Of a DNA stretch of 64,000 nucleotides, positions 44,363 to 53,472 are shown piece by piece. Below the pieces are notes generated by a model, which did not search any database, was not told where the DNA came from, and saw only the letters and a program-made list of their open reading frames with translations. The stretch lies in the sequence record PV785814.1; one strand, given 5' to 3'. Position 1 is the first letter of the stretch, and each line of letters begins with the position of its first letter. The position numbers and the translations under genes were made by a program.

Positions 44363-45451
44363 TTATAGACTATGCAAATAATCGTATGCGATAGCCACTC
44401 GCGCATCATGTAACGCAGCACCATATGCAGGTCCCGGCTCAACATCGACTTTAATGTTTCGTGTCAGTAAGATCAGTTCTGTCATTACTTTACGCGATAA
44501 CTCATCACTGACTTGTGTCAGTGCGACTCTGAACGGCAAACCTTGCTTATATGCACCTAGATACTCAAGCGTTGTAATGATTGATTCGTCGAGTGCGTGT
44601 GAGTTATTGAGGGAAAGCAAAATCTCAGACGTTTTATCAAACTGCTTAGTTGCACCGAATTTGGCAGTGTAGCGATTGCGATGGTCAAACGCTGCCCATT
44701 TAGCCATTAACAGCACGTCTTTCTCAACTTCAAACGGCAATGTTTTGAAGTGTTTCAAACTCATCAACTCACGAATACTAGGTACAGAACAGAACCCCAC
44801 GCGACCTAAGAATGCAAAATACATGTAGGCGTCTTTTTCTGTCAGTGCTTTTTGAGTCTCTAACCAAACACGTTCTTTCGGTAGATTATCAAGCATACCA
44901 TCAGCTACCATTTTCTTGCAAAGCTCGAAAGTTTCTTCGGCGACTTTGAATCCCATACTGTAGTAACGAGCAAAGAAACGTGCAACTCGTAGAACACGTA
45001 ATGGGTCTTCAGCAAATGCTTCAGTCGTGTGTCGAAGAATCTTGTTTCTCAAGTCGTCTAGACCGCCGTACGGGTCGATGACATCTTCAGTCGAACCCCA
45101 CATAAACAAGCTGTTTGGCGTCATGTCTGGGATTGCCATTGAGTTGATAGTCAGATCTCGACGAGATAAATCATCTTCTAATGTCACACCATCGGTTGTG
45201 AACGTAAAGTCAGTTGTTTTGCCACCCGTGCTTCTCTCAACACGTGCGAGTGCAACTTCATTGCCTTGTTGGTCCAACCACACGGGAAAATCTGCGCCGA
45301 TAGGTTCACCGTACATCATTTTCATTTGTTCGTGTGTGCAGTTTGTCACGACATAATCAATGTCGTTCGGGAACTGAGCCCAACCATCAACATGTTTTAG
45401 AATTGAGTCGCGAACTGCACCGCCAACGATATATTTCTTCATTTCGAACAT
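44363..45451 (-). CDS. cca: tRNA nucleotidyltransferase (CCA-adding enzyme, class II)
   Basis: YIVGGAVRD, DIDY, DLSRRDLTINSMA, EDPLRVLRVARF, ERVWLE; ATG at 45451 after GGAG; promoter TTGACT(45499-504)-17-TATTGT(45476-81). Confidence 0.93.
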   Translation of the reverse strand: MFEMKKYIVGGAVRDSILKHVDGWAQFPNDIDYVVTNCTHEQMKMMYGEPIGADFPVWLDQQGNEVALARVERSTGGKTTDFTFTTDGVTLEDDLSRRDLTINSMAIPDMTPNSLFMWGSTEDVIDPYGGLDDLRNKILRHTTEAFAEDPLRVLRVARFFARYYSMGFKVAEETFELCKKMVADGMLDNLPKERVWLETQKALTEKDAYMYFAFLGRVGFCSVPSIRELMSLKHFKTLPFEVEKDVLLMAKWAAFDHRNRYTAKFGATKQFDKTSEILLSLNNSHALDESIITTLEYLGAYKQGLPFRVALTQVSDELSRKVMTELILLTRNIKVDVEPGPAYGAALHDARVAIAYDYLHSL

Positions 45452-45523: not shown

Positions 45524-45865
45524 ATGGAATATACGAAATACGAAATAGAAAAGTATCGAAGTCGCCGTAGTCATGGTATCAATCTACCTGATTACAAAGG
45601 GGCGATTTACATCGACTTGCAAAGCAGCCCATGCGGATCAGACAGCAATTATTTCGCTGTGCTTAATAGCGAAGAGCAAGTTGCAGTCGAGATAGCTTTC
45701 GGAGGGTATTATAACGAAACTGAGCCAGACCGTGACCCGATACCAGAAGATACAGATTTTCATTTGATTGGCTCTCAAGGACATTACGAAGTTCAAGGGA
45801 GAATGTTTAACAGCAACATGCGAGTTTGGCTGCGTGGTGTAGGTAGAATAACAGTAATTTACTAA
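45524..45865 (+). CDS. Hypothetical protein (113 aa)
   Basis: ORF downstream of ACTAAATA (45486-45493), directly before the foldon fibre gene. Confidence 0.7.
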   Translation: MEYTKYEIEKYRSRRSHGINLPDYKGAIYIDLQSSPCGSDSNYFAVLNSEEQVAVEIAFGGYYNETEPDRDPIPEDTDFHLIGSQGHYEVQGRMFNSNMRVWLRGVGRITVIY

Positions 45866-45874
45866 GGAAATATT

Positions 45875-47335
45875 ATGTCAAGTATTAATATACCGGGCTT
45901 CGGGTTTACTGCTATCCCTGAAGCACCAAACGACGGTCAGCTTTACGCTCGTCGTGATGCTACATGGGAGCTTGTAGCTCTATCAGATGGTGTATTAGAA
46001 GCACCAGCCGATGGTACTGAGTACGTAAGAAAAGATTTTCAATGGGTAAACCCAACATATCCGATGTATTCAGCCGTTGAGATTTCATTTACGGCAACCG
46101 ACTCTGGTATTCAGGCAATAAACGTTGCAGATGCTATTGAAGAGCTTTATGAAAAATACCCAGAAAATATGGTATTCGTTCGAAGTTCTGCCGACTTGCC
46201 AACACCGCAATTACTAAACGGTGTCCTGACTCACAAACTTGAGGCATATGAATATGTAATTGATGGGGATGTGTCAATAGCCGCAGCAATAGCATTCCCG
46301 GGTCCCGGTCTAAATGCTACGATTCGTGCAGTGAACCGTTCTATTTTGACTTACACTGGAACAGCGGCAATGTTTCATGACTTGAACGCACAAGGTGCAA
46401 TCGAAATTGGTGGTCAAACTGAGTTTCAAGCGCCAAATGGGGATATGTTCAACTTACTATCAGGCGCAGCCGGATTTTCGTTTCAGTCGTCTAAAGCTGA
46501 CCGTTTTACAAATTGTGATTCGCTAGGTGAAGTGTATTGTAGTGGTCTATCGACGTTTGTATTGAACAATGGTACATTTAGAAACTTCAATCAGGGACTA
46601 ATTGTTCATGACCCGGGTTTCTTTGAAATCAATACGTTCTTTGCATTCGGTAACAACCAAGTCGGGTGTACATATTTCACAGTTGAGGGAACATCGTCTT
46701 CTGGCTCAGTGAACATGGATACATTGACTGTTTCAGTCGGATCAAACGAAACAGTATTCAACTTCAACCCTAATATTCAGAACACAATTGATACGATTAA
46801 TGTCAGAGATTGCACACTGAGAGGTCCATTGAATGGTCAAGTATTCGCGCCGGGTAGTTTAACACCACGTGACCGCAAATTTGAAGCATCAGGCAATACT
46901 CTTATCGGTAACACTGTTCATGGTGGCTTGATTTATCTGAGCGGTAATACGACACAAACACCAGTTGCAGCAATCAATACGCCGACTAAGGCACTTGGCA
47001 CGTGGACAACTGCTGATATATCTCACTTCAATCACACAGTCAACGGTGCATTACAATCGGAAGTCATACGCAATATATCGAGTAGCGTTGATTTGTCTGT
47101 AAGTGTTCAACCGGCTTCTGGTAACGGTGTTGTAATCCGATGCTATCTAGCTAAGAATGGCGTTCCGATTGCAGGTAGTGCAAAAACAACAACTGCTGAT
47201 AACGGAAAAACGGCAAACTTGTCTATTTCATGGCATGTTGATATAGCACAGAACGATTATTTTGAATTGTTTGTAGAGAACAGAACTGGTACAACACCAA
47301 TCATCGTCACGGACGCGACATTGCGCATACCGTAA
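45875..47335 (+). CDS. Putative trimeric virion fibre: two N-terminal foldons, beta-rich shaft, C1q/TNF-like tip
   Basis: IPEAPNDGQLYARRDATW and VLEAPADGTEYVRKDFQW resemble the T4 foldon [20 protein letters not shown]. Confidence 0.7.
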   Translation: MSSINIPGFGFTAIPEAPNDGQLYARRDATWELVALSDGVLEAPADGTEYVRKDFQWVNPTYPMYSAVEISFTATDSGIQAINVADAIEELYEKYPENMVFVRSSADLPTPQLLNGVLTHKLEAYEYVIDGDVSIAAAIAFPGPGLNATIRAVNRSILTYTGTAAMFHDLNAQGAIEIGGQTEFQAPNGDMFNLLSGAAGFSFQSSKADRFTNCDSLGEVYCSGLSTFVLNNGTFRNFNQGLIVHDPGFFEINTFFAFGNNQVGCTYFTVEGTSSSGSVNMDTLTVSVGSNETVFNFNPNIQNTIDTINVRDCTLRGPLNGQVFAPGSLTPRDRKFEASGNTLIGNTVHGGLIYLSGNTTQTPVAAINTPTKALGTWTTADISHFNHTVNGALQSEVIRNISSSVDLSVSVQPASGNGVVIRCYLAKNGVPIAGSAKTTTADNGKTANLSISWHVDIAQNDYFELFVENRTGTTPIIVTDATLRIP

Positions 47336-47370: not shown

Positions 47371-47871
47371 ATGAGTCAATTGAAAACACATGCAGATTCA
47401 CTAACAAAAGCTGAACTAGATGAATTCGCACAAGAATATTTCGGCATCGACTTAGATCGTCGTAAATCAAAAGGCGCAATGACTAAAGCACTGCTAGAAG
47501 CTGCTGAAGACAAAACGCCACTTAAACAACTGCCATGGGAAGAGCTTCTTTTAGAAGAAACGCCTGAGCCAGAAGCTGTAGTTGTCCCGGAACCAGTAGC
47601 TGAAGTGAAAGAAACGCCAGTAGTCGAACTACCGAAAGATGAATCATTCTCGCCTATCAAGCTTGCATTCAAGCGCGGTGCTGAACAATTCATGATTGCG
47701 TCTGCTTCTGCCGTTGACTCTGCAACTGCAATTTTATCAGGCAAAGATACGCTTGAAAGTGTATTGGCGTCTGATCTGCGTGTCGTGAAATCAATTTTAC
47801 ATTACGTCGAACGTGATGGTAAAGTGTTAGTTCGCGAGACTCGAAACAGTCAATTTATCACAATCAAATAA
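47371..47871 (+). CDS. inh: Inh-like prohead protease inhibitor, copy 1
   Basis: ELDEFAQEYFGIDLDRRKSKGAM resembles T4 Inh LAEYAEQFGIKVKKNKS; C-terminal VLVRETRNSQF. Confidence 0.7.
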   Translation: MSQLKTHADSLTKAELDEFAQEYFGIDLDRRKSKGAMTKALLEAAEDKTPLKQLPWEELLLEETPEPEAVVVPEPVAEVKETPVVELPKDESFSPIKLAFKRGAEQFMIASASAVDSATAILSGKDTLESVLASDLRVVKSILHYVERDGKVLVRETRNSQFITIK

Positions 47872-47880
47872 GGTAACGAA

Positions 47881-48210
47881 ATGACAACACCAATCAACAC
47901 AGAACTGAACTTGACTGTTACTACAGATCAAACCGTAGTTGATGCTGCTATTCTAGCAAAAAGCGGCTACGATGATGCTGATCAGTCACCGCTAAACCAC
48001 AACGGTGAAACGTACATCATCGTTGACAAGCAAACTTATGCTGAACTAGAAGCTGCAATCGCATCAGGTGCAGTTGGTTCAATCGACGGTCTATCTCAAG
48101 AATGCGTTGACATTCTAGCAGGTGCCGAAGATGGTATCACTCTATTGTGTCGCGAACATACGAATAGTCGATTCTTCAGAATTGAATTCGTTGTTGCTGT
48201 AGCACCATAA
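47881..48210 (+). CDS. Hypothetical protein, possibly virion-associated
   Basis: ORF with RBS in the late operon; terminator at 48211-48240. Confidence 0.7.
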   Translation: MTTPINTELNLTVTTDQTVVDAAILAKSGYDDADQSPLNHNGETYIIVDKQTYAELEAAIASGAVGSIDGLSQECVDILAGAEDGITLLCREHTNSRFFRIEFVVAVAP

Positions 48211-48268: not shown

Positions 48269-49447
48269 CTAAGCGACGAACGCTACACGCTGTACGATTG
48301 TCTGTTTTTCGTCACGAAACTCGCTGTGCTCTTTTACAGTAGCTTTAATCGTAACAGTCTCGCCAGCTTCAATCTTGTCGTTGTCATTGTTGCGTAGACG
48401 TTTAGTTCCGAACCAGATAATTAGGTTGTTTTTCTCATCACGGAAGCGGTGAATGAATGTGTCGCCGTAGTAACCTTCAGTAACGATTGTTTTCTCAAGA
48501 GTCACCGTGAAGTTTTCACGCTTCTTAACTGTACCAACGTGCTCAGACTCTGGTAGGTCAGCTTTACGCTCTGCTTCTAGTTTCGCTAGAATCTCACGCT
48601 CTTTTGCTTTGTTGAAAGCAACGATTGCCGCTGTGATAAAGCCAGTTTGTTTGTATTCTGCATATGGTGCAGCACATGACGCGATTACATTGTGCATGAA
48701 ATCGTTAGTTGCTTCTTGAACAGCAACCCATTCTAAGATTTCTTTTGCTTGCTCTTCACACTTGTCATAGTTGTATTCAGCAAGCATTGCATCACGCTCT
48801 TCGCGCATTTCTTTTGTATGTGCGTTGATCATGTTCATTACCCACTGACGAGTGATGCCGCCACCGTGGTATGAACCGTTATGCTCAACATACATAGCAG
48901 CCCAAGAAACAATCTGAAGTGCATTGTATACTGGTTTCGCTGAGCCACGACCCCATGAATCTTCCTCGCCGAACTCTGAAATTGCAACGTAGAATGTAGC
49001 TAGTGAGTCGATTGATTTAGTAGGCAGGTAGTATTTCAGGCATGAACCACCCACGCGAATCTCTTCTTTTGTTTCTTCGTTTTGAATAACGTAAGTCACG
49101 TTACGCTGACGATTTGAGTTGCAGTGATCGCATGTAGTATCGCCAAGAAGATGACGGTGATTTGTTTCGTTGTTTGAACGAACAAGATTTGTTGCGTGAT
49201 CAAGTTGAGTCAAGAATGACCAACCTTTGTTTGATGGGTATTCGCCGCGAATTGTAACGTCAACGTAGTATTCACGCTCTTTTTGACCGTTTACTACGCG
49301 AACTACTGAGTAAACTTCACCAAATTCAGATTCGATTTCAGCAACGTTTAGACGCTTTGCAATTTTGTTAGTAGATGCAACACGAGCTTCGAACTCGCTC
49401 ATGAAGATAGAACGGATTGTGTAAGTGTTTTCGAATTGGTTAGTCAT
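48269..49447 (-). CDS. Conserved phage protein with CxxC...C Zn site and C-terminal OB-fold-like domain
   Basis: CDHC...VGGSC; C-terminal GETVTIKATVKEH.EFRDEKQT; early promoter TTGACA(49512-17)-17-TATTAT(49489-94). Confidence 0.65.
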   Translation of the reverse strand: MTNQFENTYTIRSIFMSEFEARVASTNKIAKRLNVAEIESEFGEVYSVVRVVNGQKEREYYVDVTIRGEYPSNKGWSFLTQLDHATNLVRSNNETNHRHLLGDTTCDHCNSNRQRNVTYVIQNEETKEEIRVGGSCLKYYLPTKSIDSLATFYVAISEFGEEDSWGRGSAKPVYNALQIVSWAAMYVEHNGSYHGGGITRQWVMNMINAHTKEMREERDAMLAEYNYDKCEEQAKEILEWVAVQEATNDFMHNVIASCAAPYAEYKQTGFITAAIVAFNKAKEREILAKLEAERKADLPESEHVGTVKKRENFTVTLEKTIVTEGYYGDTFIHRFRDEKNNLIIWFGTKRLRNNDNDKIEAGETVTIKATVKEHSEFRDEKQTIVQRVAFVA

Positions 49448-49556
49448 AATATTCTCTCTCAGTTAGTCGATGTCGTTTCGATGTAGAGATAATACGACTA
49501 TATGGTGAAAGTGTCAATAGGTAAAAACAAAAAAGCGCAAATTAATGCGCTTTTGT

Positions 49557-50537
49557 TTATTTGTTGAGTGTGAACATAGTTACATCGCCTTGAGTTTCAA
49601 ACGAAGGCTTGTACCCATGCTTGCCGCCATATCGCTGAAATAGACGCTTGTACAATCTAACTCGCTTCTCATTTCCATCTTTGATTGATGTCGCGATTGT
49701 ATTACAGTCATATGTCGTTGCAAATTTAACCGTTTCATTAACTACAGTCGCAAATACTTGAAGTGGGTTTTCTGACGCGGTTAAATCATTCGTCCAACTT
49801 CCCATGTGTCGAACTTGGAAATGCACTTCAACGCCGCCAACTGACTCTGGTGGATTGAAATTGAACAACTCGCCATTATCACCCCAATTAATATCATGCG
49901 GGACTAGAATGACACGATATGTTTGTTGACCAATCTGAAACAGAGCTTCAATTGGCTTTTTATCACCCTTCGGGTCATCGCCTTTTGGATACATGACTTT
50001 AGCGGGCTTGTCCATAGATTCAGAGAACAGACTAGATTCACTCAAGTTTACCGATGTTAGCCATTCAGACCACGTCTTCTTATTGCCGATTTTAGCAAAC
50101 GGAATATCGTCATGATCTAGCCATTGAGCCGAACGGTCATAAGACTGAGTAGTGTTGAACCCACGATAATCATCGCCAACCCACAGCCATTTGTGGTGCC
50201 AGATTTGATTTACTTGACGTGACTTAGAAACAGCACCGTCTTTGTAAGTAACCATTAAACCAGCCGCAGGTTCTTGAACAGTATCAAATTCAACTGAGTC
50301 ATAGAACGCGACCCCGCCTTTCTTGTAGTCAATGCGAACTATATTCGGTGTGAATTGTGGATTGGCAATAGAAACTTGAGTACGAGCATCAGCAACCATT
50401 TGCTTGAACTCGTCTGGTACATAGTCAACGTGAACATATAATGAACCACCGATGTCTTTACCCACGCCCCATTTGCTGCGTTTAATCGCGCTACCTTTGC
50501 GAGTTTTCAACGTCGCACGTTCAAAAATCATGTTCAT
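49557..50537 (-). CDS. Two-domain putative internal head protein; N-domain resembles a domain of phosphorothioation-associated methyltransferases
   Basis: GK.IGGSLYVH...FDT..EP...HHKW.WV.DDY...IGNKKTW.EWL; linker LSE..FSE; late operon. Confidence 0.55.
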   Translation of the reverse strand: MNMIFERATLKTRKGSAIKRSKWGVGKDIGGSLYVHVDYVPDEFKQMVADARTQVSIANPQFTPNIVRIDYKKGGVAFYDSVEFDTVQEPAAGLMVTYKDGAVSKSRQVNQIWHHKWLWVGDDYRGFNTTQSYDRSAQWLDHDDIPFAKIGNKKTWSEWLTSVNLSESSLFSESMDKPAKVMYPKGDDPKGDKKPIEALFQIGQQTYRVILVPHDINWGDNGELFNFNPPESVGGVEVHFQVRHMGSWTNDLTASENPLQVFATVVNETVKFATTYDCNTIATSIKDGNEKRVRLYKRLFQRYGGKHGYKPSFETQGDVTMFTLNK

Positions 50538-51127
50538 CGTCTTGCCTCGTTAGTAATGTTTCTGATCATGCGTACTGCGAATTGAGTATCGCCGGTCATT
50601 GCTGCTGAAGCTGCTTTGTCAACGTAAAACGTGCTGTCTTCAATCATGTTCAAGTGATGATAGATTTCGCGAAAATCATGACGGTCGTACTCGCGAGCAT
50701 TGAATCGTAGTGCACCTGCTTTCTTGTCATCATCGTGAACACGCTTGTACTCATCAACGACACGAATCATTTCAGCGGCGTATTTCTTCATTGTCATGTT
50801 GTCAAGCTTCAGCCTCTTAGCTGCTGCCATGACTTCTTCACGCGGTCTATCAAGTTCAATCGCATCTTTTAGAATGTTCAAGCTGTGAATTGTATCAACG
50901 GCTGACTTTTCCATTCTTAGTTTATGCTCTTCGAGAGAACGATTGTGCTTTTTCAATTCACCCGAAGCAGTTGCACCAGCAATTAAGCCAGCAAATGTAC
51001 CCCAGAAACCACCTTTTCGTTGCAGACGTTTTTTAACCTCTCCCTTTGAACCGGCAGTCATTGCTTGAAATTGCGCCCATCGTCCGCTTTTTTTCGCTTT
51101 GTCCATTTCTGTTAAAAATTCAATCAT
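50534..51127 (-). CDS. Putative internal head protein with capsid-targeting leader
   Basis: N-terminus MIEFLTE resembles T4 IP leader MKTYQEFIAE; TCTAAATA promoter at 51153-51160. Confidence 0.6.
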   Translation of the reverse strand: MIEFLTEMDKAKKSGRWAQFQAMTAGSKGEVKKRLQRKGGFWGTFAGLIAGATASGELKKHNRSLEEHKLRMEKSAVDTIHSLNILKDAIELDRPREEVMAAAKRLKLDNMTMKKYAAEMIRVVDEYKRVHDDDKKAGALRFNAREYDRHDFREIYHHLNMIEDSTFYVDKAASAAMTGDTQFAVRMIRNITNEARR

Positions 51128-51208
51128 AGTTTTAACCCCTTATTGTTTATTATATTTAGACAGAAACGAAAAAAGGGCGACCGAAGTCACCCTTTTAATG
51201 TGGTTAAA

Positions 51209-52188: not shown

Positions 52189-52677
52189 TTACTTTTTGCG
52201 CCATTTTGCAAGTTTTTCATCATATTCGCTGTGCTTCCACAAATCAAACACGATTGTCCCACTCTGAAACCACCACACTAGTGCGATTGTATCATTTAGC
52301 TTCGGATCTTTCGGGTTTTTGCCAGTGTAAAGCTCAGTACTCGGGTGTGAGTGATAGATAGCTTTCTTGACCGCAAACTTATACCCCGTCTCTGGCTTAC
52401 CGACTTCTTTCGGTGGGTGAATGTTACCTAGATACGCAACTTGATAAACTGTGTTTTTGAACACAATACGACTAGAGTCGATGTTGAAAAGCAACGTCTG
52501 ATACTTAGCAGCATTCGGTGCAATTTTCCATTTATGCTTCGGTTTAGTCTCAAGTAGCTTGTCAATCTCAGGTTCAGGTATCATCTTGCCTAGATTGTGA
52601 TTACCCCATTCCTCATCAATTGAAAGACTGATATGAACACCGTATAGAGTGTTCTCATATTCGTTGAATCGAAACAT
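52189..52677 (-). CDS. Hypothetical protein with weak HigB/RelE-like C-terminal motif
   Basis: Ends IALVWWFQSGTIVFDLWKHSEYDEK. Confidence 0.55.
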   Translation of the reverse strand: MFRFNEYENTLYGVHISLSIDEEWGNHNLGKMIPEPEIDKLLETKPKHKWKIAPNAAKYQTLLFNIDSSRIVFKNTVYQVAYLGNIHPPKEVGKPETGYKFAVKKAIYHSHPSTELYTGKNPKDPKLNDTIALVWWFQSGTIVFDLWKHSEYDEKLAKWRKK

Positions 52678-52681
52678 GTTA

Positions 52682-53194
52682 TTACCTCAGATAAGTAAAG
52701 CTGTTTGATTGGCGTTCATGGACTAGTAGTTGACCGCGAAGTTTAACCCAGTGTTCAATAGTTTTCAGATCATGCGAATCGCGACGACCGATATGCCAGT
52801 CATGAATAATATCAGCCGAAAGCGGTTGATACATTTCATCACCTCGACGATAAGTAGGCATCCACTTAGGCTTGAACTCGTCTTCGATTACAATCACTAA
52901 ATCTTCTTCGCCTAGCGGGCAATCTAGTTTAATAGTGGTTAAATCGACTTCAGCCGCAATCTCAGCGTCTTTAATTGGAATCGCGTCTGATTCATCGACT
53001 AGATCGCATGTAGTCTTAGACTCGATTACAGTGCATTCTAGCGGCACATCAGATTTGCTAACGATTTCGTTAGACAATAGCTCTTCGATCATCTTGCTTT
53101 TAGTAAGTGCATTGTCGAGTTCAATGTCGTAGTGCTTCAACGCGAATTCAGCTACGCCACGTTTGGTTTGTTTCTTCAGATATTCAGTAATCAT
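52682..53194 (-). CDS. inh: Inh-like prohead protease inhibitor, copy 2
   Basis: VAEFALKHYDIELDNALTKSKMIEEL; C-terminal GQLLVHERQSNSF parallels copy 1. Confidence 0.62.
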   Translation of the reverse strand: MITEYLKKQTKRGVAEFALKHYDIELDNALTKSKMIEELLSNEIVSKSDVPLECTVIESKTTCDLVDESDAIPIKDAEIAAEVDLTTIKLDCPLGEEDLVIVIEDEFKPKWMPTYRRGDEMYQPLSADIIHDWHIGRRDSHDLKTIEHWVKLRGQLLVHERQSNSFTYLR

Positions 53195-53409: not shown

Positions 53410-53472
53410 GTTTTTAGACCCCTATAAATACAGTTATACATATTTAGACAAAACTCGCATAGAGAGAAAAAC

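What the first reader, a model, noticed from the sequence alone, without database searches (positions are those of the whole stretch)
49557..50537. Late, probably packaged protein carrying a phosphorothioation-system-associated domain
Seen: the N-terminal ~165 aa contain, in order, GK...LYVH, (I/V)R.D..K..VAF....FDT...P, H(H)K..V..DY and IG....W...L. From memory this is the motif series of the C-terminal domain of the DNA phosphorothioation-associated putative methyltransferase (TIGR04096), here without the methyltransferase. A linker with LSE/FSE (gp21-type cleavage sites) joins it to a second phage domain (VFATV...R.RLYKRL). The gene is translationally coupled to a CTS-bearing gene under a late promoter. 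Established: Dnd phosphorothioation defence is widespread in Vibrio, and T4 internal proteins are injected inhibitors. Inference: a polyprotein processed in the head and ejected to counter PT-based restriction.
Basis: inference. Interest (0 to 1): 0.74.

Follow-up and report, generated by a model that had tools for sequence, protein, structure and literature searches.

The report
Virion-packaged phage protein with Dnd-methylase-partner domain
A late gene of a T4-like Vibrio phage encodes a two-domain protein whose orthologue is found in purified virions; its front half belongs to a large uncharacterised domain family that in bacteria partners a phosphorothioation-linked DNA methyltransferase, making it a testable candidate for a new injected counter-defence protein.

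Summary
The ORF is real: window 49557-50537, minus strand, 326 aa, identical to QD01_405 and orthologous to KVP40.0371.

**Homology.** The recalled link to TIGR04096 holds, but only indirectly. The protein itself gives no hit. Of 92 family members, 39 hit the TIGR04096 C-terminal region. HHalign against genuine TIGR04096 proteins gives 91.9% probability (E 7e-7), and a pLDDT-94.6 model matches AFDB entries of that name.

**Distribution.** The family is large (964 cluster representatives) and absent from Pfam and the PDB. It occurs as:
- a standalone gene next to, or fused with, TIGR04096 in cellular defence islands (once beside dndBCDE);
- a module of phage polyvalent proteins;
- small proteins with capsid-targeting-like leaders on T4-like contigs, often fused to a CCA-adding enzyme.

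**Packaging.** The two-gene unit has a conserved late-promoter variant (TCTAAATA). Published virion mass spectrometry of phage 6E35.1a detected the orthologue (9 and 14 counts) and its upstream partner (21 and 34).

**C-terminal half.** It is GNAT-like.

**Untested.** gp21 cleavage, at conserved L/I-x-E sites ending at E6 and E167, and any action against phosphorothioate-based restriction.

The parts
51171..51196 (-). Intrinsic-terminator-like hairpin that closes the upstream gene (QD01_407) and isolates the two-gene unit
   Evidence: 11-bp stem, T-run. The stem is conserved with compensatory changes in four phages.
51153..51160 (-). Late-promoter variant TCTAAATA (7/8 of T4 TATAAATA), 25 nt upstream of the ATG of the 197-aa gene
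   Evidence: Invariant in QD01, KVP40, nt-1 and 6E35.1a, while the overlapping TATAAT is not. TMTAAATA occurs 14 times against 4.3 expected, and 12 of 14 sites lie 15-42 nt upstream of gene starts, including gp22, gp23, gp48, uvsW and the 1246-aa tail-fibre gene.
50534..51127 (-). Upstream partner gene (QD01_406, 197 aa) with invariant CTS-like leader MIEFLTE and a hydrophobic Gly/Ala-rich segment. Its stop overlaps the target's start (ATGA).
   Evidence: PHROG 16422, function unknown. The 6E35.1a orthologue VP6E351A_0019 was detected in virions with 21 and 34 counts.
49557..50537 (-). Target ORF, 326 aa (QD01_405; KVP40.0371 orthologue), including the stop codon
   Evidence: PHROG 16075. The 6E35.1a orthologue VP6E351A_0018 was detected in virions with 9 and 14 counts.
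50520..50537 (-). Six-residue leader MNMIFE ending in I-x-E (candidate gp21 site / short CTS)
   Evidence: M1, I4, F5, E6 and R7 are invariant in 8 orthologues. This is one of only two [LI]xE motifs in the protein. Analogous leaders occur in 20 of 36 non-orthologous members with a 5-16 aa leader, against 0 of 24 cellular copies.
50043..50513 (-). N-terminal 'H-x-K' domain (residues ~9-165). W113-H114-H115-K116 is encoded at 50190-50201.
   Evidence: 964 cluster representatives at E<=1e-3. AF2 pLDDT 94.6. No PDB counterpart. AFDB matches named TIGR04096. HHalign 91.9%.
50013..50045 (-). Inter-domain linker (residues 165-175) with L-S-E (conserved) and F-S-E (not conserved)
   Evidence: pLDDT below 50 at 160-174 in the full-length model. 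L165 and the E at 167/169 are conserved in all orthologues.
49560..50009 (-). C-terminal GNAT-like domain (residues 177-326)
   Evidence: pLDDT about 85-90. Top Foldseek PDB hits are all GNATs at E about 1e-3. VIA Z up to 7.3 over 177-326 against about 45 GNAT entries. Pfam gives only DUF6934 at E 0.025. The architecture is confined to the KVP40-like group.
49531..49554 (.). Bidirectional terminator-like hairpin immediately after the stop codon
41177..41818 (+). gp21 prohead protease gene of the same phage (the trans-acting enzyme required by the processing hypothesis)
   Evidence: QD01_396 annotation. Its own N-terminus is MELQLLIE, comparable to T4 gp21 'LIE-9' (PMC9026906).

Best explanation
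QD01_405 is a late-expressed, virion-packaged accessory protein of a KVP40-like (T4-type) vibriophage. It is made together with a CTS-bearing partner (QD01_406) from a two-gene late operon.

Its N-terminal module belongs to a large, unnamed 'K...H...D...H-x-K...DY' domain family. In cells, this family is the obligate partner of the phosphorothioation-linked methyltransferase TIGR04096: it is encoded by an adjacent gene, or fused at either end of the methyltransferase, inside defence islands. Phages and other mobile elements deliver the same module along with their DNA, in giant polyvalent proteins or as CTS-tagged head proteins. Its C-terminal module has a GNAT-like fold.

The most likely mode of action is that of a T4 internal protein. 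It is targeted to the prohead core, probably trimmed by gp21 after E6 and possibly split after E167. It is then ejected with the DNA to act in the first moments of infection on nucleic acid or on a host restriction/modification complex.

Shown: homology, distribution, promoter and operon anatomy, and virion presence of the orthologue.
Inferred: cleavage, ejection, and the counter-defence role.
For: Homology:
- 39 of 92 family members hit TIGR04096 at profile positions about 321-466 of 478.
- HHalign of A3 against 10 genuine TIGR04096 proteins gives 91.9% probability, E 6.9e-7, over 144 columns.
- The AF2 model (pLDDT 94.6) matches at least 7 AFDB clusters named TIGR04096-type, with TM 0.57-0.73.

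Cellular coupling:
- 14 genuine TIGR04096 ORFs (best E 3.7e-184) lie within 3.5 kb of the standalone copies, in 12 of 25 loci.
- Fusions occur at the N-terminus (Synechocystis, Pseudoalteromonas) and at the C-terminus (L032-34, L040).
- dndBCDE is adjacent in CP076682.
- TIGR04095 (7 ORFs), PT-DNA restriction endonuclease (4) and DGQHR (3) occur among the neighbours.

Mobile-element deployment:
- The giant carriers hold LPD38, LPD3, DarA_C, ART-PolyVal, MPTase-PolyVal, SNF2/ResIII and DNA methylase domains. LPD38 is reported to be restricted to phage-type polyvalent proteins, which are predicted to be packaged (PMC5512222).
- CTS-like leaders ending in [LI]xE occur in 20 of 36 members with a 5-16 aa leader, against 0 of 24 cellular copies and a 17% background in this window.
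- CTS-bearing carriers lie on T4-like contigs next to gp4, gp13, gp20, gp21 and gp23.

This gene:
- A conserved TCTAAATA late-promoter variant, flanking terminators and an ATGA overlap.
- gp21 is present in the window.
- There are exactly two [LI]xE motifs, ending at E6 and E167, both conserved.

Experiment: the orthologue and its partner were detected in purified 6E35.1a virions in both replicates, and the flanking genes were not (PMC12028318).
Against: - No direct data exist for QD01 itself. The virion counts are modest (9 and 14), and the same data set lists a few non-structural proteins at 2-7 counts.
- The leader is only 6 residues, against 10-20 in T4 (PMC5694885), with Arg at P1'.
- Two [LI]xE motifs is no more than composition predicts (1.4 expected).
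- No evidence of cleavage or ejection.
- The biochemical activity of the N-domain is unknown. No solved fold matches it, and Pfam, PHROGs and NCBIfam give no function.
- The GNAT assignment rests on borderline scores (Z below 8) and no GNAT HMM hit.
- Fusion partners are heterogeneous (MTase, GNAT, ART, CCA-adding enzyme, NFACT-R), so the target could be RNA rather than DNA.
Confidence: 0.6

Rival explanations
1. One reading: the ejected N-domain specifically counters phosphorothioate-dependent restriction (DndFGH, SspE, or PT-sensing type IV enzymes). It would do so by binding PT sites or the restriction complex, as a mimic of the host's own TIGR04096-associated module.
For: - TIGR04096 lies immediately upstream of dndBCDE in a marine gammaproteobacterial replicon.
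- TIGR04095 'DNA phosphorothioation system restriction enzyme', NF045808 'phosphorothioated DNA-binding restriction endonuclease' and DGQHR proteins are enriched next to cellular copies.
- Dnd_ABCDEFGH is listed among the defence systems of V. crassostreae strains susceptible to the related phage 6E35.1a (Table S9 of PMC12028318).
- The orthologue is in virions.
Against: - No dndC/D/E family reached 3 or more of the 125 neighbour ORFs.
- Three Vibrionaceae replicon contexts of standalone copies lack dnd genes.
- The Synechocystis and Methylibium contexts are not canonical dnd operons.
- The domain is mostly found in contexts unrelated to PT, such as polyvalent proteins and CCA-adding enzyme fusions.
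- The PT label on TIGR04095/04096 is a neighbourhood-derived name, not a tested function.
Confidence: 0.17
2. The domain acts on RNA, particularly tRNA 3' ends. The packaged protein would be part of an injected tRNA repair or protection kit against host anticodon or CCA-targeting nucleases. The link to the methyltransferase would then reflect RNA or nucleotide chemistry rather than DNA marking.
For: - In at least 7 T4-like viral loci, and in P0042, the domain is fused N-terminally to a CCA-adding enzyme plus HD domain: L079-L081, L085, L107, L124 and L131. Five of these loci (L079, L080, L085, L124, L131) and P0042 begin with an [LI]xE-terminated leader.
- It is adjacent to a CCA gene in L126 and L128, and within a few kb of one in L060 and L062-66.
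- QD01's own CCA gene is about 4 kb away, at 44363-45451.
- There is an NFACT-R RNA-binding fusion in P0023.
- RloC is among the host defences listed in Table S9.
Against: - The cellular partners are DNA-oriented: SF2 restriction-type helicases, PT-DNA endonuclease, DGQHR, dndBCDE.
- Polyvalent proteins concatenate functionally unrelated domains (PMC5512222), so fusion alone is weak evidence.
- No RNA-binding fold was recognised.
Confidence: 0.15
3. It is a minor structural or assembly component of the head (scaffold- or core-associated) with no role after ejection, or a late cytoplasmic enzyme that is carried into particles incidentally.
For: - The gene sits in a late block with two Inh-like genes and other virion-detected small proteins (orthologues VP6E351A_0013, 0014, 0016 and 0022).
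- Its abundance is similar to protease and scaffold remnants.
- It is a core gene (BBH_group_size 18) in the 18 Schizotequatrovirus genomes compared (Table S8).
Against: - The N-domain is shared with cellular defence-island proteins and with polyvalent proteins that have no capsid role.
- An invariant polar constellation (K27, H36, D85, H114, K116) across phage, plasmid and cellular copies argues for a conserved biochemical activity.
- The C-domain is swapped between lineages (nt-1/ValKK3 versus KVP40) while the N-domain stays above 90% identical. That pattern is typical of accessory effectors.
Confidence: 0.12

Closest known systems
TIGR04096 (NCBIfam 'DNA phosphorothioation-associated putative methyltransferase')
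   Same: The N-terminal domain is homologous to the non-methyltransferase domain(s) of this family. It is closest to the N-terminal copy present in long (~680-690 aa) members, which retains K27, H36, D85, H114, K116 and DY.
   Different: - No methyltransferase domain and no score against the model.
- It carries the W-H-H-K-W signature, which the modelled C-terminal copy has lost (L-F-R-K-D there).
- It is encoded by a lytic phage and fused to a GNAT-like domain.
T4 internal proteins and other CTS-targeted head proteins (IPI/IPII/IPIII, Alt)
   Same: Late expression, a short N-terminal leader ending in L/I-x-E, gp21 in the same genome, presence of the orthologue in virions, and an accessory, lineage-variable nature (PMC9026906).
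   Different: The leader is 6 rather than 10 residues. There is no sequence similarity to any T4 IP. Cleavage and ejection are not demonstrated. The protein has two domains with a second candidate site in the linker.
Phage-type polyvalent proteins and their solo 'LPD' domains (Iyer et al. 2017, PMC5512222)
   Same: The same N-domain is embedded in 2,800-4,900-aa proteins carrying LPD38, LPD3, DarA_C, ART-PolyVal, MPTase-PolyVal, SNF2 and DNA methylase domains. In the 12-protein alignment it is their most conserved segment. The paper describes solo versions near structural genes as acting in early invasion.
   Different: This domain is not among the Pfam LPD families: no Pfam hit for any of 92 members. 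I did not find it named in that paper. QD01_405 is small, and would rely on a T4-type leader and gp21 rather than an MPTase.
P1 DarB-type packaged methylase and other injected anti-restriction proteins
   Same: The concept of a virion-delivered enzyme that protects incoming DNA. MTase-plus-domain dyads of this family occur in polyvalent proteins (P0025), in viral carriers (P0050, L101, L103, L106) and with a CTS-like leader (P0055).
   Different: QD01_405 lacks the methylase. The methylase type is a class I Methyltransf_23/TIGR04096-like enzyme, not the DarB N6A-methylase-helicase dyad.
GNAT acetyltransferases (C-terminal domain)
   Same: Full-length structural alignment of residues 177-326 to many GNATs (Z 5-7.3). 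A canonical GNAT also sits next to this N-domain in P0057.
   Different: No GNAT HMM hit, only DUF6934 at E 0.025. The acetyl-CoA loop is non-canonical (…KDGNEKR…). Activity is unknown.

Membership tests
TIGR04096 (dnd_rel_methyl) | Whole-protein score at or above the curated cut-off (150 bits) | tested here: not met
   No NCBIfam hit at E<=1 for the protein or for its N-domain alone.
TIGR04096 (dnd_rel_methyl) | Class I SAM-dependent methyltransferase domain (profile positions ~44-153) | tested here: not met
   No methyltransferase hit in Pfam or NCBIfam. The local TIGR04096-MTase HMM hits other carriers but not this protein.
TIGR04096 (dnd_rel_methyl) | Non-catalytic domain homologous to profile positions ~321-466 | tested here: met
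   39 of 92 family members hit that region. HHalign gives 91.9%, E 6.9e-7. Foldseek AFDB gives TM 0.57-0.73 to named members.
TIGR04096 (dnd_rel_methyl) | Genomic neighbourhood with dnd or PT-restriction genes | tested here: inconclusive
   In the phage no gene in the annotated part of the window is named as a dnd gene, but I did not scan the window's ORFs for dnd families. For cellular relatives the link holds in some loci and not in others.
T4-type CTS-targeted, gp21-processed head proteins | Late promoter | tested here: met
   A conserved TCTAAATA lies 25 nt upstream of the operon's first ATG. The same variant precedes gp48 and the 1246-aa tail-fibre gene. This is consensus-based; no transcript data.
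T4-type CTS-targeted, gp21-processed head proteins | N-terminal ~10-20-residue propeptide ending in L/I-x-E | tested here: inconclusive
   The leader MNMIFE is only 6 residues but is invariant in orthologues. Clear 9-12-residue CTS-like leaders occur in many family members.
T4-type CTS-targeted, gp21-processed head proteins | Presence in purified virions | tested here: met
   Published MS of the syntenic, 58%-identical 6E35.1a orthologue: 9 and 14 counts (PMC12028318, Table S4). Not tested for QD01 itself.
T4-type CTS-targeted, gp21-processed head proteins | Cleavage by gp21 and ejection into the host | not testable with these tools
   gp21 is encoded in the window. No peptide-level MS data were available.
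Polyvalent-protein-associated domains | Recurrent occurrence inside giant multidomain proteins with MPTase, ART, LPD and methylase-helicase modules, plus solo versions near virion genes | tested here: met
GNAT acetyltransferase superfamily (C-domain) | GNAT fold | tested here: inconclusive
   Consistent GNAT-only top hits over the whole domain, but with Foldseek E about 1e-3 and VIA Z at most 7.3.
GNAT acetyltransferase superfamily (C-domain) | Sequence-profile membership and a canonical acetyl-CoA motif | tested here: not met
   No GNAT Pfam hit, only DUF6934 at E 0.025 against a 27-bit cut-off.

The most novel reading that the evidence does not exclude
The 'H-x-K' module is an uncharacterised catalytic or modification-reading domain that works as an obligate dyad with a Dnd-linked methyltransferase in a widespread bacterial self-marking/restriction system. 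T4-like phages and polyvalent-protein-bearing elements have captured it and inject it, via capsid-targeting leaders, to mark or shield their DNA or to jam the cognate restriction enzyme. That would define a new family of injected anti-restriction effectors. A parallel branch fused to CCA-adding enzymes would deliver tRNA repair at the moment of infection.
Probability: 0.28. Interest if true: 0.85.

Novelty: new variant of a known kind. Interest (0 to 1): 0.7.

Why it matters
Injected phage proteins that disarm host immunity are known from only a handful of examples, such as T4 IPI*, P1 Dar and T4 Alt.

This work links four things that had not been connected in the literature I could search:
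- a Dnd-neighbourhood methyltransferase family of unknown role;
- a standalone partner gene in defence islands;
- a hub-like conserved module of phage polyvalent proteins;
- CTS-tagged head proteins of T4-like phages.

All four share one domain, which has no Pfam entry and no solved structure. Published virion proteomics already places the orthologue in particles.

That makes several questions directly testable in tractable Vibrio natriegens / KVP40-type systems: what TIGR04096 and its partner domain do, whether phages counter PT-linked restriction by molecular mimicry, and whether tRNA-repair enzymes are injected. The family is also a good structural-genomics target, given a confident model and an invariant K/H/D/H-x-K constellation.

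Tried and rejected
- **Direct profile scans.** Scans of the protein against Pfam, NCBIfam and PHROGs gave no function. A negative verdict based on these alone would have been wrong.
- **ESM-Atlas feature search.** The N-domain scored 0.66 or less, which is uninformative.
- **First AF2 model.** With 9 sequences it failed on the N-domain (pLDDT below 50). It succeeded only after the exhaustive profile search supplied 92 diverse sequences.
- **Solved structures.** Foldseek PDB gave best E above 1, VIA-wide best Z 3.6, and PDB sequence search and BFVD gave no informative match.
- **PLD/HKD nuclease idea.** I considered it because of the H-x-K...D pattern and rejected it. The K-to-D spacing differs (6 residues, not 4), and no fold search returned a phospholipase D/HKD-family structure.
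- **Sigma-70 promoter reading.** I rejected a sigma-70 reading of the TATAAT upstream of the operon because it is not conserved in KVP40, while TCTAAATA is.
- **Metagenomic contigs.** Contigs for P0050, P0029, P0019, P0133 and P0042 were too short for context.
- **Search with P0050.** It found no named TIGR04096 relatives.
- **TIGR04096 against the PDB.** A profile of genuine TIGR04096 found no PDB relative, so DNA versus RNA methylase could not be decided.
- **Literature.** Searches for TIGR04096 or its product name found nothing functional. The KVP40 genome paper could not be read under the PMC id I tried.
Full report
**What is there.**
- The window is part of a KVP40-like T4-type vibriophage and is 100% identical to Vibrio phage QD01.
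- It carries the full T4 morphogenesis module, including the gp21 prohead protease, gp22 and gp23.
- The finding is a real 326-aa ORF on the minus strand (49557-50537). It is QD01_405, orthologous to KVP40.0371, and annotated 'hypothetical' in every annotated record seen.
- It lies between inh and uvsW, in a block transcribed opposite to gp23.
- An alignment of 9 orthologues shows two halves of very different conservation. Residues 1-165 are almost invariant. Residues 176-326 are variable and are replaced by a divergent version in nt-1 and ValKK3.
- Several relatives stop at, or diverge after, residue ~170. The two-domain reading is therefore correct.

**The N-terminal domain.**
- Direct scans find nothing: no Pfam or NCBIfam hit, including no TIGR04096 hit at E<=1.
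- An exhaustive profile search of 1.84 billion cluster representatives found 964 relatives at E<=1e-3 and 735 at E<=1e-10. These are solo ~160-aa proteins, mid-size fusions and 2,000-6,400-aa giants.
- When 92 isolated domain segments were scanned, 39 hit TIGR04096 (best E 2.4e-9), always at profile positions ~321-466 of 478. No Pfam family recurred.
- With the deep alignment, AlphaFold gave pLDDT 94.6. That model matches AFDB clusters named 'DNA phosphorothioation-associated putative methyltransferase' (TM 0.57-0.73, E 1e-6 to 3e-4). It has no counterpart among solved structures.
- Genuine TIGR04096 proteins recovered later gave HHalign probability 91.9% and E 6.9e-7 over 144 columns.
The protein is nonetheless not a TIGR04096 member: it has no methyltransferase and no score.

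**What the domain does in cells.**
- The 41 genome loci recovered by the pattern-based scan for the domain are almost all from Planctomycetota, and there it is mostly a solo 155-220-aa protein.
- I scanned 125 neighbouring ORFs from 25 of these loci. Among them, 14 are genuine TIGR04096 (best E 3.7e-184), 7 match TIGR04095 ('DNA phosphorothioation system restriction enzyme'), 4 match the PT-DNA-binding restriction endonuclease family, and 3 are DGQHR proteins.
- Gene maps show the solo gene directly beside the methyltransferase gene in 12 of 25 loci. Other neighbours are restriction-type SF2 helicases, BrxL-like Lon-kinase fusions and AddA/GajB-like helicases.
- Elsewhere the same pair is fused:
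  - at the N-terminus of ~680-690-aa TIGR04096 proteins of Synechocystis and Pseudoalteromonas;
  - at the C-terminus in Pirellula proteins.
- In the Pseudoalteromonas replicon the methyltransferase is immediately upstream of dndB-C-D-E. The PT association of the curated family is therefore real, at least in part.
- Across all classes, G26, K27, H36, F84, D85, P90, H114, K116, V120, Y124 and W156 are invariant. This pattern suggests a conserved active or ligand-binding site. That is an inference; no activity is known.

**What it does in mobile elements.**
- The giant carriers are bona fide polyvalent proteins with LPD38, LPD3, DarA_C, ART-PolyVal, MPTase-PolyVal, SNF2/ResIII and DNA methylase domains. 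The module is their most conserved segment.
- LPD38 is reported only from phage-type polyvalent proteins, which are predicted to be packaged and injected (PMC5512222).
- A Methyltransf_23/TIGR04096-like methylase often sits immediately upstream of the module (P0025, P0100, P0050, L101, L103, L106).
- Many proteins with the module at the N-terminus begin with 5-12-residue leaders that closely resemble the T4 capsid-targeting sequence and end in [LI]-x-E just before the domain.
  - This holds for 20 of 36 non-orthologous members with a 5-16 aa leader.
  - It holds for 0 of 24 cellular copies.
  - The background in this window is 17%, and that background itself includes gp21, gp22, gp23 and gp68.
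- Such carriers lie on T4-like contigs next to gp4, gp13, gp20, gp21 and gp23.
- The literature supports each premise: CTS propeptides of 10-20 residues, cleavage after Glu, and CTS-like leaders as a general way for T4 relatives to load varied proteins (PMC9026906, PMC5694885).
- An unexpected recurring partner is the CCA-adding tRNA nucleotidyltransferase. It is fused in at least 7 viral loci and in P0042, and is adjacent or nearby in others.

**This gene's expression and packaging.**
- The 197-aa upstream gene and the target form a unit bounded by terminator-like hairpins.
- The stop and start codons overlap as ATGA.
- A TCTAAATA element lies 25 nt upstream of the first ATG. It is invariant in QD01, KVP40, nt-1 and 6E35.1a.
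- TMTAAATA is enriched in the window: 14 matches against 4.3 expected. Twelve of the 14 sites sit 15-42 nt upstream of gene starts, including gp22, gp23, gp48, uvsW and the 1246-aa tail-fibre gene.
- The partner protein starts with an invariant MIEFLTE.
- The target has exactly two [LI]-x-E motifs. One ends at E6 (MNMIFE). The other ends at E167, in the low-confidence linker. Both are conserved in all orthologues.
- Published tandem MS of purified 6E35.1a particles detected the syntenic orthologue VP6E351A_0018 (9 and 14 counts) and the partner VP6E351A_0019 (21 and 34). Genes 0017, 0020 and 0021 were not detected. For comparison, the head protease gave 17 and 28 counts (PMC12028318, Tables S4 and S8).
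- The authors tagged the gene 'Defense?' but did not discuss it.

**The C-terminal domain.** It is well modelled (pLDDT ~85-90) and aligns over its whole length to many GNAT acetyltransferases, but at borderline scores. No GNAT HMM matches. The architecture of N-domain plus this C-domain is confined to the KVP40-like group.

**Verdict.**
  - 'late, packaged, PT-system-associated domain' holds;
  - 'processed polyprotein' is plausible but untested;
  - 'counters PT restriction' is one of several open possibilities.
- Vibrio hosts of the related phage do include Dnd_ABCDEFGH-positive strains.
- However, the domain's contexts are far broader than PT.
- I rate the gene as a new variant of a known kind: a CTS-type packaged accessory protein that carries an uncharacterised conflict-system domain.

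Noticed in passing
window 7818, 33302, 51153(-), 53441(-), 62949(-); also 41375 and 42504 (intragenic): TCTAAATA appears to serve as a second late-promoter form beside TATAAATA. Five of its seven copies lie 25-40 nt upstream of gene starts (gp48, QD01_388, QD01_406, QD01_411 and the 1246-aa tail-fibre gene). Divergent late-type elements at 53423(+) and 53441(-) flank the uvsW / QD01_411 intergenic region.
   Followed up: partly
window 50534-51127 (-): QD01_406 (197 aa) has an invariant CTS-like leader MIEFLTE, a Gly/Ala-rich hydrophobic stretch (…GGFWGTFAGLIAGATASG…) and no family assignment (PHROG 16422). Its 6E35.1a orthologue is more abundant in virions (21 and 34 counts) than the target. 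Its function is unexplored.
   Followed up: partly
L079, L080, L081, L085, L107, L124, L131 (viral contigs) and P0042; window 44363-45451 (-): On T4-like contigs the domain is fused N-terminally to a CCA-adding enzyme plus HD domain; most of these fusions (L079, L080, L085, L124, L131, P0042) begin with a CTS-like leader. This suggests a tRNA 3'-end repair enzyme packaged into heads. QD01 has a separate CCA-adding enzyme gene right after gp23.
   Followed up: partly
window 48269-49447 (-) with promoter-like site 49517-49489 (-): The next gene downstream (QD01_404, 392 aa, PHROG 2319) has a near-consensus sigma-70-type promoter (TTGACA-17-TATTAT). Its 6E35.1a orthologue was not detected in virions. 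Yet a homologue follows the domain carrier in two other T4-like contigs (L130, L132), so there is conserved linkage despite different timing signals.
   Followed up: no
window 52189-52677 (-), 47881-48210 (+), 45875-47335 (+), 45524-45865 (+): By synteny with the published 6E35.1a virion MS table, several neighbouring 'hypothetical' genes correspond to virion proteins. These are VP6E351A_0022 (17 and 14 counts), 0016 (24 and 40), the very abundant 0014 (414 and 637) and 0013 (10 and 13). Together with two Inh-like genes (47371-47871 and 52682-53194), this makes the block a head-accessory region.
   Followed up: no
L015 10878-12334 and L020 7735-9189 (Planctomycetota genome loci): The TIGR04096 methyltransferase gene next to the standalone domain gene is split into 2-3 ORF fragments in these two loci. 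This may reflect pseudogenisation or assembly error.
   Followed up: no
L023 5944-8151 and L038 1751-3958: A 736-aa fusion of a BrxL-like Lon-related domain (PDB 8emc, E 2e-49) with a Ser/Thr kinase sits beside the TIGR04096 + standalone-domain pair. It is an unusual defence-island architecture.
   Followed up: no
L001 7001-7963 (KVP40.0371 annotation): The RefSeq note for KVP40.0371 says 'identified by match to PFAM PF05480'.
   Followed up: partly
L054 (Vibrio sp. THAF64 plasmid pTHAF64_c) 11998-12450: A standalone H-H-K-type copy of the domain lies in a 95-kb 'plasmid' that also encodes baseplate, tail and terminase proteins. That makes it a likely phage-plasmid. Other copies sit in 0.6-0.9-Mb Vibrio and Photobacterium replicons, without dnd genes nearby.
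   Followed up: partly
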